Shown: positions 3,001 to 57,895 of the stretch, piece after piece
Layout: each line of letters opens with the position of its first letter
Numbering within the stretch: the first letter of the stretch is position 1
Assembly: GCA_024704765.1 (NCBI GenBank)
Contig: JAKMXF010000144.1
Location: 620,001 to 684,000, forward strand
DNA from: Oopsacas minuta
Taxonomy: Eukaryota; Animalia; Porifera
Length of the DNA stretch: 64,000 nt
Reading direction: 5' to 3'
The notes under the pieces: model-generated
Told to the model about the DNA's origin: nothing
The model's input: the letters and a program-made list of their open reading frames with translations, nothing else
Databases searched by the model: none
Program-made: the position numbers and the translations under genes

Positions 3001-6000
3001 AACGTTAGTGTACGTAGATTCTCACTATTATTTGTTGAAGTTAGAGATATTGATGAGTTCTGTCGATTAATTATAAAAGATATAATATATTATCAGCTAT
3101 CTGGTCCAGTTTAATTTCTCCAACTAGAGGGATCATTATGTTTAACTCAAAACCTGTTAAACTACAGTTACTAGTACAATCATTGATAGCTTTATTTACT
3201 AAAGCAGCACTGTTTTTATTTGTTAGATTACATATCAGTATCCTGCCATTATTCTTGCAGCTGAGAGCATCGCTGAAGTTTGTATCTGTTATATCAGCAC
3301 CCGCAATAGCACAGCTAATTATTGCCAGTATAAAATATATTAACTTCATATTATTTGTATGTTATAGGTCTTCGAGTCGGTTTAAATAGTAACATTTAAA
3401 TTTTCCTATTGTAAGAAGATATCTAGCTTAATGTCCTACAGCATGAATAAAAACATACTGATATAGCATTATACTACTATGTGTAAGCATAACACAACAT
3501 ATTCATGTTATTTGCATTAATGGTAATATCATATCTTATCCGTCTTCCGTTTTAACAAGAGCCTATTATGTATATACTGTTGGTTTCTATACTGAATAAC
3601 AGGCAGTGGGAGCTGGTACGGCACCAATAATTCGCAATTTCTATTAATGCAGTACCGATACAATATACCTCGCTTCACCAATGATTTTTGCTTCCTACGT
3701 CTAATACTGTCCTAATACAACATATATTTATTCTATCATAGAGCCTGCAATACATTTTCATAGTTAATGATAACACATGAGTGGTGAGATCTACTTCTAT
3801 TATACAAAGTTTCAGCCTTCTGTTCTGTCCAAACTTTTTGAATATGTACTTAATCTGGTGGGAGTATTTGTAATTAATATCTAGGCTCATAACAATAGTA
3901 ACTTATATTGTACATATTGCAGGTATAACTAGTCCATACAGTATAGTTATAGCAAATATGAAGTTAATGTATTTTATACTGGCAATAATTAGCTGTGCTA
4001 TTGCGGATGCTGATATAACAGATATATGCTCCAGTAATGCTCTCAGCTGCAAGAATAGTGGCAGGATACTGATATGCAATCTAACAAATACGAGCAGTAC
4101 TGCTTCAGTAAATAAAGCTATCAATGATTGTACTAGTAACTGTAGTTTAACAGGTTTTGAGTTAAACATAATGATCCCACTAGATGGAGAAATTAAACTG
4201 GACCAGATAGCTGATAATATATTATATCTTTTTATAAATAATCGACAGAATTCATCAATATTTCTAACTTCAACAAATTATAGTGAGAATCTACGTACAC
4301 TAACGTTATTTACTGACAATGCAGTTACAGGGAAATATTCTATCGACAATAATTCATTCTTTTCACATTTTCCACGAATCGAGAAGATAAGTATCTCTAA
4401 TGTAATATTCCAATCTCTCCCATCCTTCACTCATCTATACTCTCTAACTTATCTCCATATTAATCACGTATACTTCTCAAATAATAGCAACAGAAGTATA
4501 CAAGAGGAATTTGTAGGAGGTTTATATCAACTTAAAGACTTACAAATAAATGATTCCTCTCCACCAATCTCCAGAATATCAGAACTAGCTTTCAAAGATC
4601 TCTCTTCTCTCACTTCACTCAATTTAGATAATAACAACATTCAGTCTATCTCAGAGAATCAGTTCTCATACTCTCATGCACTAAGCTACATATCTCTCAA
4701 GAATAACAACTTAACAAATCTCTACTTACAAACATTTCAACAATTTCCACAATTATCAAGTATTGATGTGTCAGATAATCCTCTCAATTGTTGTTCCTGT
4801 GCTCTCCAATGGATATCTGTAGCTATACAGAAATACGATTTCCCATTTATAGCCCCTGCTTGTCAGTATCCATATAACAACCTAACAGCTACATCACCAT
4901 ATGTATACGAGTCATGTCCTCCTCTCTCACTTTCTCTACAGTGTATGAATAAGTCTACTCCTCTCTGTCCCTCTAATCTCTCCTGCTACAACACAGTTAA
5001 CAGCTACCAGTGTAGTGCATGTCCTCCTGGATATGGACAGGTGTCAGACTACAGATGTGTAGATCTAGACTCATGTTCTCGTATTCCCGCCCCCTGTGGA
5101 GACAGAATGTGTGTTAACACAGTAGACTCATTCATATGTCTGTCTCCTAGCAACCCATGTGACATCAGGAATGGTGGATGCGAACAGAAATGTGAGCATA
5201 ACGGATCATCTCATTGGTGTACTTGTTATCCAGGATTTGAGCTCATAGCACTACTGGAGAATGTGCTAATACAGTTTCCAGCTTCGGGCAAGAAATATTT
5301 TATCTGATGCTAGGAGTTATATTGATTCTAGCCATCATACTATGGATTATAATAGCTGTAGGGTTTATTATGCTATGTTGCTATTTGAACCGAAACAAAT
5401 TCAAACAGTACCACATTCTAAAACCTGAGAGAGAGCCACCTCGCCTACATCCCATGAGTTATGACGTAATCCCTCTCCTTGGTATGGATAACTCTGTAAC
5501 CGATCCAAACTCTAATGATAGTTTAGATGAATACGACTAAGTTCTGTATCATACATTTACGTGAAGTATATTTCAGTGGTATTTATATGTTTTATTGTTA
5601 CACAATATAGTGTTTGTACAAGTAATATTTTCTTATGAATCAATAGTTATTATACAATATTTTCAGGTTAGCATTGCTTCCAATGAACGTAACATAGCTA
5701 AATGCAGTGACCAGATAGAATCCTGCAAACAGGATATAAAGGAAGCAGAAGAGAGGAAGATTAATATATCAGAGGAGTTGTCTAACTTAGAACAAGAAGT
5801 TATGCGTGTGATGAGTCAGTTTGAGAAACATATAGAGGGTAGAGACGATATTAGAGAGGAAGTAGAGCTGATTAAGAGCGAGCTAACTGAACTAACTAAC
5901 TCACTAAATAAACAGAAGTATGATTTACAGGATCTTAAGAATGAGAAAGAGAAGTATGAGCAAAACTCTACATAATATTTGATACAGACATTTGTTATAT

Positions 6001-50477: not shown

Positions 50478-50969
50478 ATGTTATCACTATTGAGGCAATC
50501 TCGCCTTCTTATGAGGCCGAACACACTCACTCTTGCCAACAGAACTCCAGCAGTTGCATGGTACCACAAGAATGTATTAGATCATTATGAAAATCCTAGA
50601 AACGTTGGTTCATTGGATAAGAGCAAGAAAAACGTAGGAACTGGGCTAGTAGGAGCACCAGCTTGCGGTGACGTCATGAAACTACAAATAGAAGTTGATG
50701 ATGAAGGTAAGATCGTAAATGCCAAATTCAAAACATTTGGCTGTGGATCAGCTATCGCTTCTAGCTCGCTTGCAACAGAGTGGGTGAAAGGGAAGCGAGT
50801 GAACGATGCCGGTAAGATCAAGAATTCTGAAATTGCAAAAGAATTGAAACTCCCACCTGTAAAACTCCACTGTTCTATGTTAGCAGAGGATGCTATCAAG
50901 GCTGCTCTCAAAGATTATCAGCGTAAACAGGATGATGCTAAGAATACTCAGAGTGCTACAGCTAACTAA
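50478..50969 (+). CDS. ISCU: Iron-sulfur cluster scaffold protein, mitochondrial
   Basis: Presequence, then YHKNVLDHYENPRNVG, GAPACGDVMKLQI, FKTFGCGSAIASSS, LPPVKLHCSMLAEDA; intronless. Confidence 0.97.
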   Translation: MLSLLRQSRLLMRPNTLTLANRTPAVAWYHKNVLDHYENPRNVGSLDKSKKNVGTGLVGAPACGDVMKLQIEVDDEGKIVNAKFKTFGCGSAIASSSLATEWVKGKRVNDAGKIKNSEIAKELKLPPVKLHCSMLAEDAIKAALKDYQRKQDDAKNTQSATAN

Positions 50970-51334
50970 CTTCTAATTTACATTCCTTTAGTTATTATAA
51001 ATCAAACCTTAAATTCTCCCTACCTGCTTGAATTTGTGATCAATGAGGATTATATCAACTAATATATTCAGAAATTTACTAGGTAAATTGCATGCTTGTC
51101 TTCCCTAGCCAGACTGCTAGAATCAGTGATCAGAAAGGCAGCCCTATCTGTCCTTTTACTGGCTACAAGACCCTGTTTATTCTGTATTATTCGTCCATTT
51201 TTTACAGTGACCTTTCTGGCAAACACTGGCTGCTGAGCCAAATCCCTATTTCCTTCATATTTGCAAATAGTAATATTCTGTGGTTTTGTGTTTATTTTTA
51301 GAATGAAATTCTTCCTCATGAACTCGTGACTCTA

Positions 51335-53280
51335 ATGTTTGCTAAATTCTCCACATACTGTTTATACATCCATAAACGAACTCAAAAAATCAAATTATTC
51401 ACTCGAATTGCTCATAGAGCCAAATATGTTACGAGTAACAACTATAAGCAATGCAATTCCGCTAACCACTGGACACGTGACCGAATGCTGAGATCTAATG
51501 AAATAGCTAAACCCCAGATGACACGAAGAGGATTAGATAACTCCGATAAACCATTCATTCCCTCATTAGTGGGAGGAGTTAAGCCTAATGCTCTGGATCC
51601 TGTTAGAGACGTGGATAGTCCTTCTATACATCCCTACTATAATGAATTACAGAATTTAGAATATTCTAATGCTGTATTACAGAGCAGGTAAGTGTAGGTA
51701 GAATATTCGGCATACTGTTTAGGGTAGCGATTCCCAACCTTTTCACCCATGGATACTTCTATCTATTTTCACAGTCTACAGGATCACCTCCCATAAACTG
51801 CAAATTGAATTTGAGATCCTGTGGACACCCTGCTATATTCCGTCTTCCGGGAAGGGATCCATGAACCTGGCATAGGTTATAAATACCTTGATAACACAGG
51901 AATGTAGGAGTAGGAGTATTGTGATTAACATTCATAATATGTTCCAGCAAATAAATTTACTCCTCTCTTTCAATCTATTATATTATTTTAGCGAACCAGA
52001 TGATCCTGGTCCTCTGGACAATCACACCTACGAGTTCATCACTACAGAAGATAGGATAGACGTGTTGGTACAGAAACTGAATGAAGTGACAGAAATCGCG
52101 ATTGACTTAGAACATCACGACTATCGATCTTATTTAGGGTTTACTTGTCTTGTACAGATCTCAATCAAAGGACATGATTATGTCATTGATCCTCTATGTG
52201 TGGGACACTGTTTACACAAGCTATTGGACCCCTTCACTAATCCTCAAATCATAAAGGTAAACTAAATTCACATAGAATTATCATATATATCATTATATCG
52301 ATAAATTTCCAGGTATTACATGGAGGAAATTCTGATTTGCTATGTCTACAGAGAGACTTCAGCCTCTATCTGGTTGGAATGTTTGATACTTATACATCAG
52401 CTATAGCTTTGCGATTACCAAAACTATCACTAGCATTCCTACTCAATCATTATTGTAATGTTACTGCGAGCAAAAAGTTCCAAATTGCAGATTGGCGTTT
52501 GAGACCACTCCCCCCTCAGATGGAGAGATACGCCCGAGAGGACACTCACTACTTACTCCACATCTACCATAGAATGAGAGATGAACTAATCAGGAGAAGT
52601 ACCAAGGATACATATTTACTAACTGAAGTAAGTAATAGATTTACAGTAGATTATTGTTATGTTACTTATGTATAATTCTAGTTACTTGACAAGAGTAGAA
52701 AGGTTTGTTTAAAAGTATACACAAAACCGATGTTCTACCCACAAGGTTATCTAAGACTGCTCTCTAAGAACGCTCGCTCAATAAACCCCTTCCAGAGAGA
52801 GATAGCTAAGAGATTGTACGCCTGGCGTAACCTCATTGCTCGTGAGAAAGATGAGAGTTTTGAGTACGTTCTCCCTACGTACATGTTGAAACAGATATCA
52901 AGGAACATTCCTTCTGGTCATCATGGTATCCTAGCATGTTGTTATCCTATTCCTCCTATAGTAGAGAGCTGTATTGATGAATTGGTTATCATTATAGAGA
53001 ATGCGAAGAAAAACTGTTACGAGCTATCATATCGATGCAAATCTCCTAAGAGTAAGAGTTATATATTAAAAATTTCTTGGAAATTCCATTAACATCATCC
53101 AATCTGGAAATCACTGTTTAGTTGAGCTTTGTTCTTCTAAAATTCAAATTGCATATACTATAATATCTATTTTTAGATATTTGTCCTGATATGCATCAAA
53201 TAAGTGAGTCTCTAAAACGCAAGAGTAATTATGTTTGTTCATGTCACTATGACCTAATTAAAGAAAAGATTGAATTATAG
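51335..53280 (+). CDS. EXOSC10-like: Short Rrp6/EXOSC10 paralogue (468 aa): basic N-terminal extension + DEDD-Y exonuclease + HRDC; no PMC2NT or long C-tail
   Basis: Exons 51335-51687, 51992-52256, 52313-52627, 52682-53051, 53177-53280 (1,407 nt, in frame, TAG). IAIDLEHH, HGGNSD and YAREDTHYL retained; same intron positions as the full-length copy. The last exon is less certain. Confidence 0.8.
51725..51890. mobile_element. hAT-like MITE in intron 1 of the short Rrp6 paralogue
   Basis: 5' end AGCGATTCCCAACCTTTTCACCCATGGA matches the reverse complement of 17765-17792; 3' end is degenerate. Confidence 0.55.
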
Positions 53281-53704
53281 AGACGCAAATATTATGTCCG
53301 CCCTTCCCTTGAGCCTCCCGACACTATAATCCAGGCAAGATATTACCTCGAAGACAATATCTGGGAATTAAGACGTCAAACGATTGATTATACTGAATGT
53401 GTTAGGAATTGGATTGTCAGGTAAGTACCAAAGGTGCACATGTCGGTTAAGATGCTATGATATTAAACATCATTTTGGGACAGGACAATGCTTGCTCAAT
53501 CTTATAATACCATTAATATATTTCTATACTTTAGTGCCTACAATTATAAACATTAATAATACGTATACGAATTCAAGAATATTCTTAGTATTTGATAATA
53601 CTTCGATCTCAAATGTAACCCACATGATATATGTTAAAACTATGTATGGAAACACTCCTGACATAACTCTCTACTATTAGTTTGTATTTATTTAATCCTA
53701 CCGT

Positions 53705-56700
53705 ATGCAAATGGAGACTAAACCATCTGAAGAGTTAGACCCGTCTCCTCCCTCACTGGAGATTGAATCATTCTCGAAAAATGGATTCCAGAACCTTGTC
53801 CTCTTGACTCGTCTCTCCCACGGCCTACCGCACAAAACAACAGACTATGACTACTACTCATCTTTTCCAGGTTTCCAGTTCTTTACTGCTAAAATGCGAG
53901 AGCGTAGTTTTTCTCTAATACAGAAGCTATCCACTGGTATCAGTCCACTTCTCCCGCGATTAGCTAGCAACGAGCATAACCCCCTCCCTGAGATCGAAGA
54001 ATTATTTGATAAGTTAGTGGAGACAAATGACAGTGGATTGGAACAAGTTGGGCATCTCATTGATATACTAAATGGTGTCATACCTCCCCCAGCTCTTATA
54101 CCCTCCCCTCTTACAGCTATAGAGACAGATTCAATCTCCCACGCACCCTCTACCTCATCTGTCTCCACATCAACAGTTCCCTACTCCTCCAGCCTTCAGT
54201 TACCCACATGGAACAGGCTACAAAGAGGTCAGGGTCCTACTAATCACTGGGTACGTGGTCAGTTGTTAAGATCTAATCAGATACCAAAACCACAAATAAC
54301 ACGACTTGGATTAGATAACTCTGATACTCCATTTATCCCCGCGTTAAGAGGAGGTGTTAAGCCTAATGCTGTAGACCCTGTTAGAAGTGTTATTGATCAT
54401 TCGTCTCTAGATGACCTGCTTTCTAGGATGAGAGCACAGGATTCAGCTAGGTTACATCCTTACTACGATGAGTTACAAGATGTTAATTATTCTCAAACTG
54501 TATTTCATAACAGGTCAGTTTTTCAGAAATTTATTCACTAAATAATTAATTATTTATCATTAGCGTGTTTCTTAACTTTACTGACACGAGGCAGCTGTTT
54601 TGTTGCCTTGGAAAATTGACATTAATCAGCGATTGTATAAATTGACATCCATGGTATTTTAAGAACACCAATATACTGACATCTAGCTCTTCTATACTTA
54701 TAACTGTGTTATAGCGAACCAGATGATCCTGGTCCTCTGGACAATCACACCTACGAGTTCATCACTACAGAAGATAGGATAGACGTGTTGGTACAGAAAC
54801 TGAATGAAGTGACAGAAATCGCGATTGACTTAGAACATCACGACTATCGATCTTATTTAGGGTTTACTTGTCTTGTACAGATCTCAATCAAAGGACATGA
54901 TTACGTCATTGATCCTCTATGTGTGGGACACTGTTTACACAAGCTATTGGACCCCTTCACTAATCCTCAAATCATAAAGGTCAAATACATTGATAACATT
55001 CTGTTTAGAAACAGATAGAAATACAATTGTTTAATGCATGTACGTATAGCTTTTACTGCCTTTCAACGCTCTACAGGTATTACACGGAGCAGATCATGAT
55101 GTACAATGGCTACAAAGGGATTTTGGTCTCTATCTAGTTGGAATGTTTGACACTCATCAATCCTCTATCGTTTTGGGATTACCGAAAAAGTCGCTCGCTT
55201 TTCTACTCAATTATTGTTGTAATGTTACTGCGAGCAAAAAGTTCCAAATTGCAGATTGGCGTTTGAGACCCCTCCCCCCTCAGATGGAGAGATACGCTAG
55301 AGAGGACACTCACTACTTACTCTACATCTATCATAGAATGAGAAATGAACTAATTAGGAGAAGTACCAAGGATTTATGCTTACTTACTGAAGTAAGTAAT
55401 AGATTTACAGTAGATTATTGTTATGGATATTCAACTCCCTTTATATCGATATATAGAAGTCTGATATTTTATAAATATGGTCCCAAACTGTCAAACTTAA
55501 ATTTCATTTGTTTATCGAACTCCGCTTATATCAAAGTATTAATCGCGGTCCCTTGAGCTTCGATATACCCAGAATTGACTGTATAATTCTCTCTATCTAT
55601 TTGTAGGTACTTGACAAGAGTAGAATGATTTGTTTAAAAGTATATACAAAACCGATATTCGACCCACAAGGTTATCTGAGACTGCTTTCTAAGAACGCTC
55701 GTTCAATAAACCCCTTCCAGAGAGAGATAGCTAAGAGATTGTACGCCTGGCGTAACCTCACTGCTCGTGAGAAAGATGAGAGTTTTGAGTACGTCTTACC
55801 CAGTAGCATGCTGTTCCAGATATCTGATAAAATTCCAACTGGTAAACAGGGTATTCTAGCATGTTGTGATCCAATACCTCCTCTAATGAGCAGCTCTCTA
55901 GATGAATTAGTTATGATTCTGCAGGAAGCTAAAACCTATTGCACTCAGAATCCTAATTTTGAAATGCTTCCTGTCAAAAGGAGAAAGAGTGAGAGATTAA
56001 ATTCCACACCAATTAGCTCACTGGTAAATACAAGCTGTCCAGATGTATTGGAGGTAACTGTAGATCAAAATAATGATCCTAACCATTTTACTCCAGCTAA
56101 GGATTATATGACAATTCCAGAAGGAAAAGCTTCTCTCTCAATTTTAGCAGAATGTCCTTCTCAAGGGGAGGAAGATGTAAAAGCATTAATTAATAAAGTG
56201 CTGGCTAGTTTTACAGATCCTTTTGATTTGTTCCTAATGCGACCAGCTGATTCAACTGAACCTACTGCTAAACATGATCTTCAAGGGGCTATATCGCTAC
56301 CCTTAGAAGATGGTATTCTAGAACAAGATATTATATATCTAGCTCCAGATAAGGACAAACCTAAGGCGTATAACCCTCTTGTATTTACAACTATTAAACC
56401 AGACAAATCTGACGTCACAGAACCTATTGAAGTTATTAATAACAGTAATGAGTTAGTTTTGGATGAGGTTACAGTACCAAAAGATTTTATAGTAATCGGA
56501 GATATGATGAGAAAGGAAATGAAGAACCAACCAACTCAGAATGGGGAATATAAAAAATCTAAAAGAGGAAGGAAAAGGAAGCATTTTAGAGAACCTGGTC
56601 AAACCATACAGACCCAAATTAGGCCATTTAAATCGTTCAACTATTCCGCTATGCCTCCTCCTCCCGTTATTCATCCCATGCCTCCCCCTAAACGTATGCG

Positions 56701-56890
56701 ATTTCAAAACCCTTTTCCTCGACACCCCATGCCTCCTGTACCCCCTCCGTTCATTGTCCCTGGTTCTCGGAATATGTATCCGCCTCCAATAAGGCCTTTT
56801 AGGCTTTATGATAGAGGGTTTAGTGTTTTCAATAGGTACCCACCTCCTCAGCACTTTGTGAGGCACCAAGGAGTCCCTTGGCCCAGTTGA
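53705..56890 (+). CDS. EXOSC10: Exosome component 10 (Rrp6), full length, 890 aa
   Basis: Exons 53705-54513, 54715-54979, 55077-55391, 55607-56890. PMC2NT (DYDYYSSFPGF), DLEHH, HGADHDVQWLQRDF, YAREDTHYL, HRDC (LYAWRNLTAREKDES), basic NLS KKSKRGRKRK. Confidence 0.95.
55428..55583. mobile_element. MITE family A copy in EXOSC10 intron 3
   Basis: TATTCAACTCC...TTCGATATACCCAGAATTGACTG-TA; absent from the paralogous intron 52628-52681. Confidence 0.8.
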
Positions 56891-57895
56891 ATCCCTGACC
56901 AGCTTCTCCACCTGTCCAGGTAAGTTGTATTTAACTTAGCACTAACTTCATACGTACTTTTACTTTAAATAATTATTTTGTGTTCCCCATATTTATAGCG
57001 GTATTCGTAAATAGTAATCCATTTGATTCTCAAGTTAACTGTTCTGTGCGTATTTTCACAATATTGCATTCATAATTTATGATTTTCTACATACAAACAT
57101 ACAAACATACATACTACATCAAATTTTATGCTGGACTATAATATGATTTGTTGTTTTGTTTGTATTGTTATTTAATTACGTACTTTTGAATACCTTACTT
57201 TGGAATTTATATATCATATTTGTTGTAGAAGCATTTTAGGGGAAATCAAAATGTTTGTATACTTATTATGTATTAACGTAGTTTCTGGCGTTCTTTCTTG
57301 ATTTATGCATTTTTGATTCGTTTGTGTTCTAAGTTTTGAATTTATGTTTGCATTTTCACGGATTTATAATTCTAAGAATTGTTTTCATTGAATTCTCTTA
57401 TAAAAACACCTAATTTTCGTAATGAATTTTATTATTGAATATTTATTATTAATAATAATTTCTCGTATTTTGCCTGATTTGCAATGTGAATAATATAAGA
57501 ATTGAATTTTTATCAAATTTTGTATAAATATATTAAATGGTTCTACAGAATTAACAAATATATTTTTCGGAAGGGTTCCGTTAACAACTTATTCATGTAT
57601 CTACAATATTCTACGATATTAATTGACTATTTCAAAACTATCACTTATACATTTGTCCCTTTACGCAATATATAATTGTAGTCCAAATATACACGCATTC
57701 TTGTTATATTTTATGAATAGAATAGAAGAATTAGAATATCTAGCAATTAGTTTATTAATATTTATATTTATGTAACATTATAATTACTCTATGAAATTAC
57801 GTAATATATTTGATTGATGCAGAATCCTTGCTATTTATCTTTCCTCGTAATCTTACTTGTAATTCTGTCTTTTGGTGTTCTCAGAACTCCCTTTA

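What the first reader, a model, noticed from the sequence alone, without database searches (positions are those of the whole stretch)
51335..53280. Rrp6 duplicate remodelled into an RNase D-like enzyme with a mitochondrial-presequence-like N-terminus
Seen: an intact 468-aa spliced ORF with the DEDD-Y residues (DLE, HGGNSD, YAREDT) and HRDC retained. PMC2NT, the long C-terminal region and the basic NLS of the neighbouring full-length EXOSC10 are absent. The ~42 non-homologous N-terminal residues (MFAKFSTYCLYIHKRTQKIKLFTRIAHRAKYVTSNNYKQCNS) contain 9 K/R and no D/E. Established: PMC2NT binds C1D/Rrp47, the C-terminus tethers Rrp6 to the exosome core, exonuclease+HRDC is the bacterial RNase D architecture, and presequences are basic and acid-free. 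Inference: a neofunctionalised exosome-independent 3'-5' exoribonuclease, possibly for mitochondrial RNA processing.
Basis: partly seen in the sequence, partly recalled or inferred. Interest (0 to 1): 0.75.

Follow-up and report, generated by a model that had tools for sequence, protein, structure and literature searches.

The report
Conserved short Rrp6 nuclease in glass sponges
Next to its normal EXOSC10/Rrp6 gene, the glass sponge Oopsacas minuta carries an expressed, shortened copy with only the catalytic core and a new basic N-terminus; at least four other glass sponges have it too, so it is a real, selected gene, but whether it enters mitochondria is untested.

Summary
The window comes from Oopsacas minuta. 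It is a four-exon, 447-aa copy of EXOSC10/Rrp6, lying between ISCU and the full-length gene. It keeps all five DEDD-Y residues and the HRDC domain. It lacks PMC2NT and the C-terminal tail.

Two corrections:
RNA runs straight through it, and the unspliced tail (..ISWKF) is conserved in two relatives. The stop is at 53092.
- The copy is old. Intact copies sit in the same synteny in Vazella and three unnamed hexactinellid assemblies.

dN/dS between orthologous short copies is 0.2-0.37; for the full-length gene it is 0.12-0.17. Exon 2 is kept nearly identical to the neighbour in every species tested, by gene conversion. The segment around the ExoII motif stays copy-specific.

The basic, acid-poor N-terminal extension behaves as coding sequence and is conserved in all five lineages.

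Against this, the only O. minuta RNA run starts at 51406, which is 71 nt downstream of that ATG. No import predictor could be run. The gene model and age are new; the localisation is still open.

The parts
50478..50969 (+). Intronless ISCU gene (mitochondrial Fe-S scaffold), the conserved upstream neighbour of the short copy in all five lineages
   Evidence: Pfam NifU_N, E 8e-54. Same position in L001, L005, L006 and L008. RNA coverage falls to zero between it and the short copy.
51299..51334 (+). Conserved 36-nt leader: an acceptor-like TAG (51299-51301), an 8-codon upstream ORF (51303-51329) and a GAACTCGT..CTC motif before the ATG
   Evidence: The in-frame TAG lies exactly 12 codons upstream of the ATG in Oopsacas, Vazella and species 3. 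Vazella and species 3 are 89% identical here with no gaps, against 72% with many gaps in the rest of the intergenic DNA. Not covered by the O. minuta RNA contigs.
51335..51421 (+). N-terminal block (29 codons) with no homology to EXOSC10: basic and acid-free, the candidate targeting peptide
   Evidence: 13 of 28 aligned positions (27 compared, one gap) are identical to Vazella, shuffle z 8.5. Vazella vs species 3: dN/dS 0.18, substitutions by codon position 2/2/6, no indels. The Vazella transcript-derived protein P0121 starts at the homologous Met.
51335..51687 (+). Exon 1 of the short copy. Homology to EXOSC10 begins about 51462 (NHW). Met51 (51485) is the GenBank start
   Evidence: RNA contig 51406-51687 at depth 539, and the joint 51687|51992.
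51406..51406 (+). First base covered by RNA contigs in run X4. A TATA-like CATAAA (51371-51376) and an Inr-like TCACTC (51399-51404) lie just upstream
   Evidence: Depth is zero in 51150-51349, and the depth of bin 51350-51549 is fully explained by the one contig that starts at 51406. The promoter motifs were read from the sequence and are inference only.
51992..52256 (+). Exon 2 (ExoI motif DLEHH), kept nearly identical to exon 2 of the neighbouring EXOSC10 by gene conversion
   Evidence: 1 difference in 265 nt to 54715-54979. The same holds inside Vazella (3), species 3 (2) and species 4 (8), while between species dS is above 1.
52313..52627 (+). Exon 3. The first 168 nt (ExoII, HGGNSDLLCLQRDF) stay copy-specific. 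The last 147 nt (ExoIII, YAREDTHY) are homogenised with the neighbour
   Evidence: 35 vs 12 differences to the neighbour. Identity matrices. Joints 52256|52313 and 52627|52682 are seen in RNA.
52682..53092 (+). Exon 4: linker, HRDC and a short conserved tail, with the true stop at 53090-53092
   Evidence: Pfam HRDC. The exon is 411 nt in Oopsacas and Vazella. The ISWKF tail is conserved. The RNA contig 52939-53333 is unspliced.
53093..53333 (+). 3' untranslated region.
   Evidence: A continuous RNA contig and no 53051|53177 joint. No homology to the EXOSC10 tail.
53705..56890 (+). Full-length EXOSC10/Rrp6 (890 aa; exons 53705-54513, 54715-54979, 55077-55391, 55607-56890), the partner of the short copy in the tandem duplication and in gene conversion
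   Evidence: Orthologues in Vazella (P0044, P0121) and three other assemblies.

Best explanation
This is a conserved, expressed, 'core-only' paralogue of the nuclear exosome nuclease EXOSC10/Rrp6.

Origin. A tandem partial duplication arose before the Oopsacas/Vazella split, and possibly earlier in glass sponges. It kept only the region that forms the crystallised catalytic core of Rrp6: the N-terminal wrap, the DEDD-Y exonuclease and the HRDC domain.

Likely activity (inferred). It has lost PMC2NT, which docks Rrp47/C1D and Mtr4. It has also lost the C-terminal exosome-association region and the basic NLS. It should therefore act as a free, distributive 3'-5' exoribonuclease, in the manner of bacterial RNase D. 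All five catalytic residues are retained in all five lineages, which is shown. Activity itself is inferred.

Evolution (shown). The gene is a mosaic. Exon 2 and the ExoIII half of exon 3 are continually overwritten by gene conversion with the neighbouring EXOSC10. The ExoII flank, the second half of HRDC and both termini keep copy-specific sequence under purifying selection. This points to a distinct substrate or partner specificity.

N-terminus. A new N-terminal extension of about 30-45 aa is conserved coding sequence. It is net positive (+3 to +7 in the first 25 residues) and acid-free for 17-48 residues in every lineage. My best single reading is a mitochondrial targeting peptide (about 45%), inferred from composition only.

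Expression in O. minuta. The one RNA data set shows transcripts starting about 51406. These would give a shorter protein from Met51 without the extension. Two isoforms, or a lineage-specific shift of the start, are possible.
For: - Gene structure and domains.
- Expression and splicing of three introns, and no splicing of the fourth proposed intron.
- GenBank LOD99_1381 is this gene.
- Orthologues in conserved synteny: Vazella L001, L005 (39, 41, 44), L006 (56, 57, 59), L008/L007 (69-72).
- Purifying selection between orthologous short copies: dN/dS 0.37 (Vazella vs species 3), 0.26 (species 4 vs 5), about 0.2 (Oopsacas vs Vazella). The full-length gene gives 0.12-0.17.
- Concerted evolution of exon 2 in four species, with persistent divergence of the ExoII segment.
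- N-terminal block: conserved ATG, conserved 36-nt leader, open frame in five lineages with in-frame indels only, dN/dS 0.18 and 0.31, third-position bias. It is transcribed in Vazella (P0121).
- Charge contrast with EXOSC10 N-termini, and similarity to the ISCU presequence controls.
- Precedent for a mitochondrial RNase D-family enzyme: TbRND (PMC7797062).
Against: - O. minuta RNA contigs do not cover 51302-51405. They begin at 51406 with no foreign leader, and the genome authors' model starts at Met51. The extension may therefore not be made in the sampled tissue.
- Contigs cannot prove a transcript start.
- No TargetP, MitoFates or DeepLoc run was possible. My charge and hydrophobic-moment scores are crude.
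- In Vazella and species 3 the first acidic residue is already at position 18.
- In that pair the block is more constrained than its neighbouring copy-specific segments (0.18 vs 0.55-0.9). That would also fit a specific binding motif.
- Enzymatic activity and independence from the exosome are inferred from domain content only.
- Species 4's copy groups with its own EXOSC10 in the tree (83/97), so a single origin for all five is not proven.
Confidence: 0.7

Rival explanations
1. Same free core-only nuclease, but not mitochondrial. It works in the cytoplasm or nucleus. The N-terminal block would be a partner- or RNA-binding or nuclear/nucleolar motif that replaces lost functions. Alternatively, in O. 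minuta it is simply not translated and the protein starts at Met51.
For: - RNA contigs start at 51406 and GenBank starts at Met51.
- Specific residues (T, C, L, H, K, T, LFT, A) are invariant across Oopsacas, Vazella and species 3, and the block has the lowest dN/dS of the copy-specific segments.
- There are basic clusters such as HKRTQKIK and RKHKPTR.
- Plants have RRP6-like paralogues with non-exosome roles (PMC8894942).
Against: - The second clade's extension (MRTLS[LI]QKLLT..) has dispersed rather than clustered basic residues, and shares only weak sequence similarity with the first clade (z about 3).
- What is conserved across all five is the physico-chemical pattern typical of presequences.
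- The upstream ORF and its ATG context are retained in O. minuta.
Confidence: 0.4
2. The upstream copy's first exon(s) act mainly as an alternative 5' end of the downstream EXOSC10. Splicing of short-copy exon 1/2 to EXOSC10 exon 2/3 would give a PMC2NT-less enzyme that still has the exosome-binding tail.
For: - Vazella Trinity isoform P0121 is exactly short-copy exon 1 + exon 2 followed by EXOSC10 exons 3-4.
- A joint 52256|55077 was reported in O. minuta RNA.
Against: - Exon 2 is nearly identical in the two genes, so both observations are what an assembly or mapping switch inside exon 2 would give.
- The depth of the 52256|55077 joint (1377) matches EXOSC10, not the short copy.
- The short copy's own contig and joint depths agree with each other (exon 1 539, exon 2-3 joint 551, exon 3-4 joint 622).
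- Exons 3 and 4 of the short copy are intact and under selection in five lineages.
Confidence: 0.1
3. A transcribed but decaying, truncated duplicate (a pseudogene in the making) that looks intact only because gene conversion keeps repairing it.
For: - Protein evolution is faster than in EXOSC10: 20 vs 4 lineage-specific changes against the Vazella orthologue.
- dN/dS is about twice that of EXOSC10.
- Upstream ATGs lie in the leader.
Against: - The reading frame is intact in five lineages and two haplotypes, including segments that are never converted.
- dN/dS is 0.2-0.37 between orthologues in unconverted parts.
- Copy-specific residues and indels are shared across species.
- Introns are correctly spliced.
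Confidence: 0.03
4. The conservation upstream of Met51 reflects promoter elements for a start near 51401 (TATA-like CATAAA, Inr-like TCACTC), not protein-coding sequence.
For: The two best-conserved peptide motifs (HK and LFT) coincide with CATAAA and T[CT]ACTC, spaced about 28 nt apart and just before the RNA contig start.
Against: - The frame is open from a conserved ATG in five lineages, with indels only in multiples of three.
- Substitutions show a third-position bias and low dN/dS.
- In Vazella the region is inside a transcript-derived ORF.
Confidence: 0.05

Closest known systems
EXOSC10 / Rrp6 (nuclear exosome 3'-5' exoribonuclease)
   Same: It is derived from this gene by tandem duplication. 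It is 44% identical to human EXOSC10 over the exonuclease and HRDC domains (E 4e-89 to 7MQA/3SAF). The DEDD-Y residues and the N-terminal wrap region are the same, and exon 2 is nearly identical to the resident EXOSC10.
   Different: It has no PMC2NT, no C-terminal exosome-association region or lasso, and no basic NLS. It has a new basic N-terminal extension. The ExoII surroundings are altered: HGAD.DV.W becomes HGG..D[LM][LQ][CAV] in four lineages and HGASSDLLA in species 3. It evolves about twice as fast.
Bacterial RNase D
   Same: A free-standing DEDD-Y exonuclease followed by HRDC, with no complex-docking domains. It matches E. coli RNase D 1YT3 at E 8e-15.
   Different: It is a eukaryotic Rrp6 derivative by descent. 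It has one HRDC rather than two, and it keeps the Rrp6-specific N-terminal wrap.
Arabidopsis RRP6L1-3 (plant Rrp6 paralogues)
   Same: Lineage-specific multiplication of Rrp6, with at least one paralogue dispensable for exosome-mediated decay (PMC8894942).
   Different: An independent duplication in plants. No tandem mosaic gene conversion with the parent has been reported there.
TbRND, the mitochondrial RNase D-family exoribonuclease of Trypanosoma brucei
   Same: A eukaryote that has a nuclear/cytosolic Rrp6 plus a second RNase D-family enzyme working in the mitochondrion (PMC7797062). This is the precedent for the proposed localisation.
   Different: TbRND carries zinc fingers instead of HRDC and is not a recent Rrp6 duplicate. 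Its role is trimming guide-RNA U-tails, which has no known equivalent in sponges.

Membership tests
RNase D / Rrp6 group of DEDD-Y exonucleases | ExoI (D.E), ExoII (D) and ExoIII (Y...D) catalytic residues in a DNA_pol_A_exo1 fold | tested here: met
   Pfam PF01612 on exons 2 and 3. Alignment to human EXOSC10 and yeast Rrp6 structures. The residues are retained in all five lineages.
RNase D / Rrp6 group of DEDD-Y exonucleases | HRDC domain C-terminal to the exonuclease | tested here: met
   Pfam PF00570, E 3e-8, on exon 4. It aligns to the human HRDC structure 2CPR.
Exosome-bound Rrp6/EXOSC10 proper | N-terminal PMC2NT domain (Rrp47/C1D and Mtr4 docking) | tested here: not met
   No Pfam hit on exon 1. 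No remnant found by tblastn in 50970-51500. Absent in all orthologues.
Exosome-bound Rrp6/EXOSC10 proper | C-terminal region after HRDC that binds the Exo9 core, with a basic NLS | tested here: not met
   The ORF stops 23 residues after the last alignable HRDC position. No remnant downstream. All orthologues stop at the same place.
Exosome-bound Rrp6/EXOSC10 proper | Physical association with Exo9 / C1D / MTR4 | not testable with these tools
   Needs co-purification.
Mitochondrial matrix proteins with a cleavable presequence | N-terminal 15-50 residues that are net positive, lack acidic residues and can form an amphipathic helix | tested here: inconclusive
   Net charge +3 to +7 in the first 25 residues and first acidic residue at 18-49 in five lineages, against -4 to -6 for EXOSC10. 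The maximum 11-residue hydrophobic moment in the first 25 residues is 0.40-0.93, against 0.71-0.80 for the ISCU controls scored over their first 30 residues. These are home-made scores, not a validated predictor.
Mitochondrial matrix proteins with a cleavable presequence | The presequence-encoding ATG is present in the mRNA | tested here: inconclusive
   Present in the Vazella transcript-derived ORF P0121. Not covered by O. minuta RNA contigs, which start at 51406.
Mitochondrial matrix proteins with a cleavable presequence | Import into mitochondria, or presence in a mitochondrial proteome | not testable with these tools
   Experimental.

The most novel reading that the evidence does not exclude
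Glass sponges have retargeted a copy of the nuclear exosome nuclease Rrp6 to mitochondria as a free RNase D-like enzyme. This would be the first animal case of an exosome nuclease recruited to organellar RNA processing. Long (imported) and short (Met51, cytosolic or nuclear) isoforms would be chosen by alternative transcription start or by the conserved 8-codon upstream ORF. Gene conversion with EXOSC10 would keep the catalytic exon identical, while selection holds the specificity-determining ExoII and HRDC segments apart.
Probability: 0.35. Interest if true: 0.72.

Novelty: new variant of a known kind. Interest (0 to 1): 0.55.

Why it matters
EXOSC10/Rrp6 is normally a single-copy gene in animals, and its function is tied to the exosome through its terminal domains.

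A paralogue stripped to the catalytic core, kept for a long time in a whole sponge lineage, is a natural experiment on what Rrp6 does without the exosome. It is also a clean example of mosaic concerted evolution. One exon is kept identical to the parent in each of the four species tested, next to a segment that selection keeps different.

If the N-terminal extension is a presequence, it would add an unexpected nuclease to animal mitochondrial RNA metabolism, with the trypanosome enzyme TbRND as the only parallel.

In practice, the public annotation (LOD99_1381, 'hypothetical protein') has a wrong C-terminus and probably a wrong start.

Tried and rejected
1. Pairwise dN/dS of the two copies inside O. 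minuta (0.30), and a relative-rate test with the Vazella EXOSC10 as outgroup (20 vs 4 changes). Both first suggested a young, fast-evolving duplicate. Gene conversion makes the copies look young, so I dropped this once the orthologues were found.

2. Search for remnants of PMC2NT upstream and of the tail downstream, by tblastn and local DNA alignment. Nothing was found, so the duplicated segment, or what survives of it, is 51462-53000 only.

3. Taking the RNA contig start (51406) as proof that the upstream ATG is unused. I weakened this after finding the ATG, its 36-nt leader and the N-terminal block conserved in relatives. The conflict is reported, not resolved.

4. 'Promoter, not coding' as the reason for N-terminal conservation. 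Rejected on codon-position bias, retention of the frame in five lineages, and the Vazella transcript.

5. Derivation of the extension from the neighbouring ISCU presequence. In Vazella and species 3, R.NTL.L....PT matches (shuffle p 0.002-0.007). It does not match in Oopsacas or species 5, and nucleotide identity is only 19-22 of 39. Kept as a weak lead.

6. A word-index search with EXOSC10 exon 4 found only the O. minuta protein. The whole-library HMM search with the short-copy exon 4 profile found no such exon outside these sponge assemblies.

7. No structure prediction was run. The core is 44% identical to solved structures, and a shallow alignment would not tell a presequence from a motif.

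8. The species behind ENA assemblies ERZ25069837, ERZ25766962 and ERZ25072730 could not be named.
Full report
**What is at the coordinates**

The window carries three genes on the + strand within 6.5 kb:
- an intronless ISCU gene (50478-50969);
- a full-length EXOSC10/Rrp6 gene (53705-56890, four exons, 890 aa) with PMC2NT, the exonuclease domain, HRDC and a long proline- and basic-rich tail.

Pfam finds the 3'-5' exonuclease domain on exons 2 and 3 and HRDC on exon 4, and nothing on exon 1.

Against solved structures it aligns from the pre-exonuclease wrap through HRDC with human EXOSC10 (E 4e-89) and yeast Rrp6. The motifs DLE..SD and Y...D sit at the catalytic positions.

Homology to the neighbour runs only from about 51462 to about 53000. 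Neither tblastn nor local DNA alignment finds any remnant of PMC2NT upstream or of the tail downstream.

The 42 N-terminal residues do hold 9 K/R and no D/E. Only 0.3% of stop-free 42-residue windows in the six frames of this window match that.

**Organism and annotation**

A word-index search returned one protein, 'hypothetical protein LOD99_1381 [Oopsacas minuta]' (P0001, 418 aa).

The O. minuta genome paper mentions neither the exosome, Rrp6 nor trans-splicing (PMC10280926).

**RNA evidence**

Only four runs of one study hold this DNA. One of them, X4, behaves as RNA-seq. It has TruSeq adapters and GT..AG joints, and depth is 7 over intron 1 against about 540 on exon 1.

What X4 shows:
- All three introns of the short copy are spliced, at exactly 51687|51992, 52256|52313 and 52627|52682.
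- Depths agree with each other: exon 1 contig 539, exon 2-3 joint 551, exon 3-4 joint 622.
A contig runs unbroken over 52939-53333.
- Coverage is zero between the end of ISCU and 51349. The depth of the next bin is fully explained by a single contig that starts at 51406 and carries no foreign letters. The ATG at 51335 is therefore not covered.

No AG lies between 51345 and 51405, so 51406 is not a splice acceptor. A TATA-like CATAAA (51371-51376) and an Inr-like TCACTC (51399-51404) sit just upstream; that is my reading only.

If transcripts really start there, the first in-frame ATG is Met51, preceded by two out-of-frame ATGs. Contigs cannot prove a start, so I treat this as evidence against use of 51335 in that sample, not as proof.

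**The turn: relatives**

A hit at 68% identity, P0044, is the Vazella pourtalesii EXOSC10 (EukProt). Its cluster led to a 46.8-kb Vazella contig, L001. That contig has the same order: ISCU, a short HRDC-containing copy, then EXOSC10.

The Vazella short copy is an intact four-exon, 441-aa gene. Its exon 2, 3 and 4 lengths (265, 315 and 411 nt) are identical to those of Oopsacas.

A profile of short-copy exon 4, followed by the whole-library search, found three more assemblies of unnamed hexactinellids with the same synteny and intact short copies:
- L005, 446 aa;
- L006, 432 aa from its first ATG;
- L008, 442 aa, with L007 as a second haplotype.

All copies keep D-E-D-Y-D and HRDC. All begin their homology at the same point (N.W) and all stop just after HRDC. 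No short-copy exon 4 was found outside these sponges.

**Gene model corrections from conservation**

Read unspliced, the Oopsacas C-terminus ..ILKISWKFH aligns with ..ILNISWKFL.. in Vazella and ..ILHISWKFL.. in L005. The stop is therefore at 53092 and the protein is 447 aa from 51335.

The N-terminal extension is conserved:
- 13 of 28 aligned positions (27 compared, one gap) are identical between Oopsacas and Vazella, shuffle z 8.5.
- The same ATG is used.
- The nearest in-frame stop lies exactly 12 codons upstream in three species.
- The leader is conserved (TAGAATGRAA...AACTCGT..CTC..ATG) and holds an 8-codon upstream ORF.

Between Vazella and L005 the 29-codon block has:
- dN/dS 0.18;
- substitutions at codon positions 1/2/3 of 2/2/6;
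- no indels.

In the same pair, introns are 75-82% identical with gaps, and the intergenic DNA barely aligns.

The L006/L008 clade has a different-looking extension, MRTLS[LI]QKLLT.V..IR...R.SRY. Its dN/dS is 0.31, and its similarity to the first clade is weak but detectable (z 3.2-3.7). The extra upstream ATG of L006 is not an open frame in L008.

The Vazella transcript-derived protein P0121 starts at the homologous Met. The extension is therefore coding sequence, and in Vazella it is transcribed.

**Selection and concerted evolution**

| Comparison of orthologues | Short copy dN/dS | EXOSC10 dN/dS |
|---|---|---|
| Vazella vs L005 | 0.37 | 0.17 |
| L006 vs L008 | 0.26 | not computed |
| Oopsacas vs Vazella | 0.21 | 0.12 |

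The short copy is constrained, about half as tightly as its parent.

Differences between the two copies within a species:

| Segment | Oopsacas | Vazella | L005 | L006 |
|---|---|---|---|---|
| Exon 2 (265 nt) | 1 | 3 | 2 | 8 |
| First 168 nt of exon 3 (ExoII flank) | 35 | 58 | 58 | 35 |
| Last 147 nt of exon 3 (ExoIII) | 12 | 13 | 12 | 5 |

- Between species, the same exon 2 has dS above 1. Exon 2 is therefore being homogenised in every lineage tested.
- In Oopsacas the first half of exon 4 is also homogenised, at 91% amino-acid identity to the neighbour.
- The ExoII flank stays different although it lies between converted tracts.
- Copy-specific states are shared across species: HGG in place of HGAD in four of the five lineages (HGAS in L005) and loss of the Trp after ExoII in all five; a 16-18-residue deletion in exon 1, SRNIPS and the ISWKF tail in the Oopsacas/Vazella/L005 group.
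- A tree of the less-converted segments groups the Oopsacas short copy with those of Vazella and L005 (83/93). It places the L006 copy with its own EXOSC10 (83/97). A single origin is not excluded but is not proven for that clade.
- My earlier inference of a young duplicate was an artefact of conversion.

**How it probably works**

Shown:
- a transcribed, spliced and selected gene that encodes the Rrp6 catalytic core alone;
- absence of both docking regions in every lineage;
- retention of the catalytic residues.

Inferred:
- It is a free 3'-5' exoribonuclease, like RNase D, that does not ride on the exosome.
- The persistently distinct ExoII flank and HRDC half encode a different substrate or partner preference.

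**Localisation**

The C-terminal NLS is gone. Every short-copy N-terminus is net +3 to +7 over 25 residues, with no acidic residue for 17-48 positions. The EXOSC10 N-termini are -4 to -6.

Maximum 11-residue hydrophobic moments in the first 25 residues are 0.40-0.93. The ISCU presequences of the same species, scored over their first 30 residues, give 0.71-0.80.

The conserved feature across both clades is the physico-chemical pattern rather than the sequence, as is typical of presequences. A mitochondrial RNase D-family enzyme exists in trypanosomes (PMC7797062).

Counting against this:
- the O. minuta RNA start;
- the early acidic residues in two species;
- the unusually tight constraint on the block in the Vazella/L005 pair;
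- the lack of any validated predictor here.

I put mitochondrial targeting at about 45%, another role for the extension at about 40%, and the rest on the minor rivals.

**The Vazella chimera**

P0121 is short-copy exon 1 plus the shared exon 2, followed exactly by EXOSC10 exons 3-4. Because exon 2 is identical in the two genes, a Trinity switch is the simplest reading.

The O. minuta joint 52256|55077 has the depth of EXOSC10 (1377), not of the short copy. Real cross-splicing remains possible, at about 10%.

**Novelty**

Rrp6 paralogues are known in plants (PMC8894942). I found no description of this animal paralogue. The locus is annotated only as a hypothetical HRDC protein.

It is a new variant of a known kind. 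The gene's reality, age, mosaic evolution and corrected model are solid. The mitochondrial role is an attractive but untested inference.

Noticed in passing
window 53679-53704: An RNA contig of EXOSC10 carries 11 foreign letters (AAAAAACTTAC) directly before the acceptor AG at 53679-53680, 24 nt upstream of the ATG. The string occurs nowhere in the window. This looks like a trans-spliced leader, as earlier notes on this genome proposed and as reported for Aphrocallistes (PMC10282587).
   Followed up: partly
window 51307, 51736, 51808: DNA contigs of runs X1-X3 match up to 51307, or only from 51736 or 51808, and then continue into unlike sequence for 135-255+ letters. This could be a structural variant or a divergent haplotype spanning exon 1 of the short copy. 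It might bear on the missing RNA coverage upstream of 51406.
   Followed up: no
window 51303-51329; L001 6315-6362; L005 6897-6923: A short upstream ORF starts 2 nt after the acceptor-like TAG. It ends at the same place (..NS-stop) in Oopsacas and species 3, 5 nt before the main ATG. In Vazella it runs on over the ATG. It could regulate the choice between Met1 and Met51.
   Followed up: partly
window 56918-56921: An RNA contig leaves the genome at 56920, at a GTAAGT donor 30 nt after the EXOSC10 stop codon, and continues with AGAGCTGCAACTGGG.. This points to an intron in the 3' UTR or a further exon.
   Followed up: no
window 55495-55548: All three DNA runs carry a variant in EXOSC10 intron 3 in which about 52 nt are replaced by GTAGCT. 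This is an indel polymorphism or an assembly difference.
   Followed up: no
L001 6356-6394 vs 5460-5498; L005 equivalent: In Vazella and species 3 the short copy's N-terminal R.NTL.L....PT resembles the presequence of the adjacent ISCU (RPNTLTLANRAPT; shuffle p 0.002-0.007). There is no such match in Oopsacas or species 5. It is a weak hint that the extension came from a duplicated piece of the neighbour's presequence.
   Followed up: partly
L005 10512-11688; L007 1803-3024: Species 3 has a 1.2-kb EXOSC10 intron 3 full of GGTCCGG-type repeats, where the other species have 145-215 nt. One haplotype of species 5 has a 1.2-kb insertion between ISCU and the short copy. Both are probably mobile-element insertions.
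   Followed up: no
window 50478-50969 and the four related loci: ISCU is a single uninterrupted ORF in all five hexactinellid lineages, and its presequence is highly conserved (about 80% identity between Oopsacas and Vazella).
   Followed up: no
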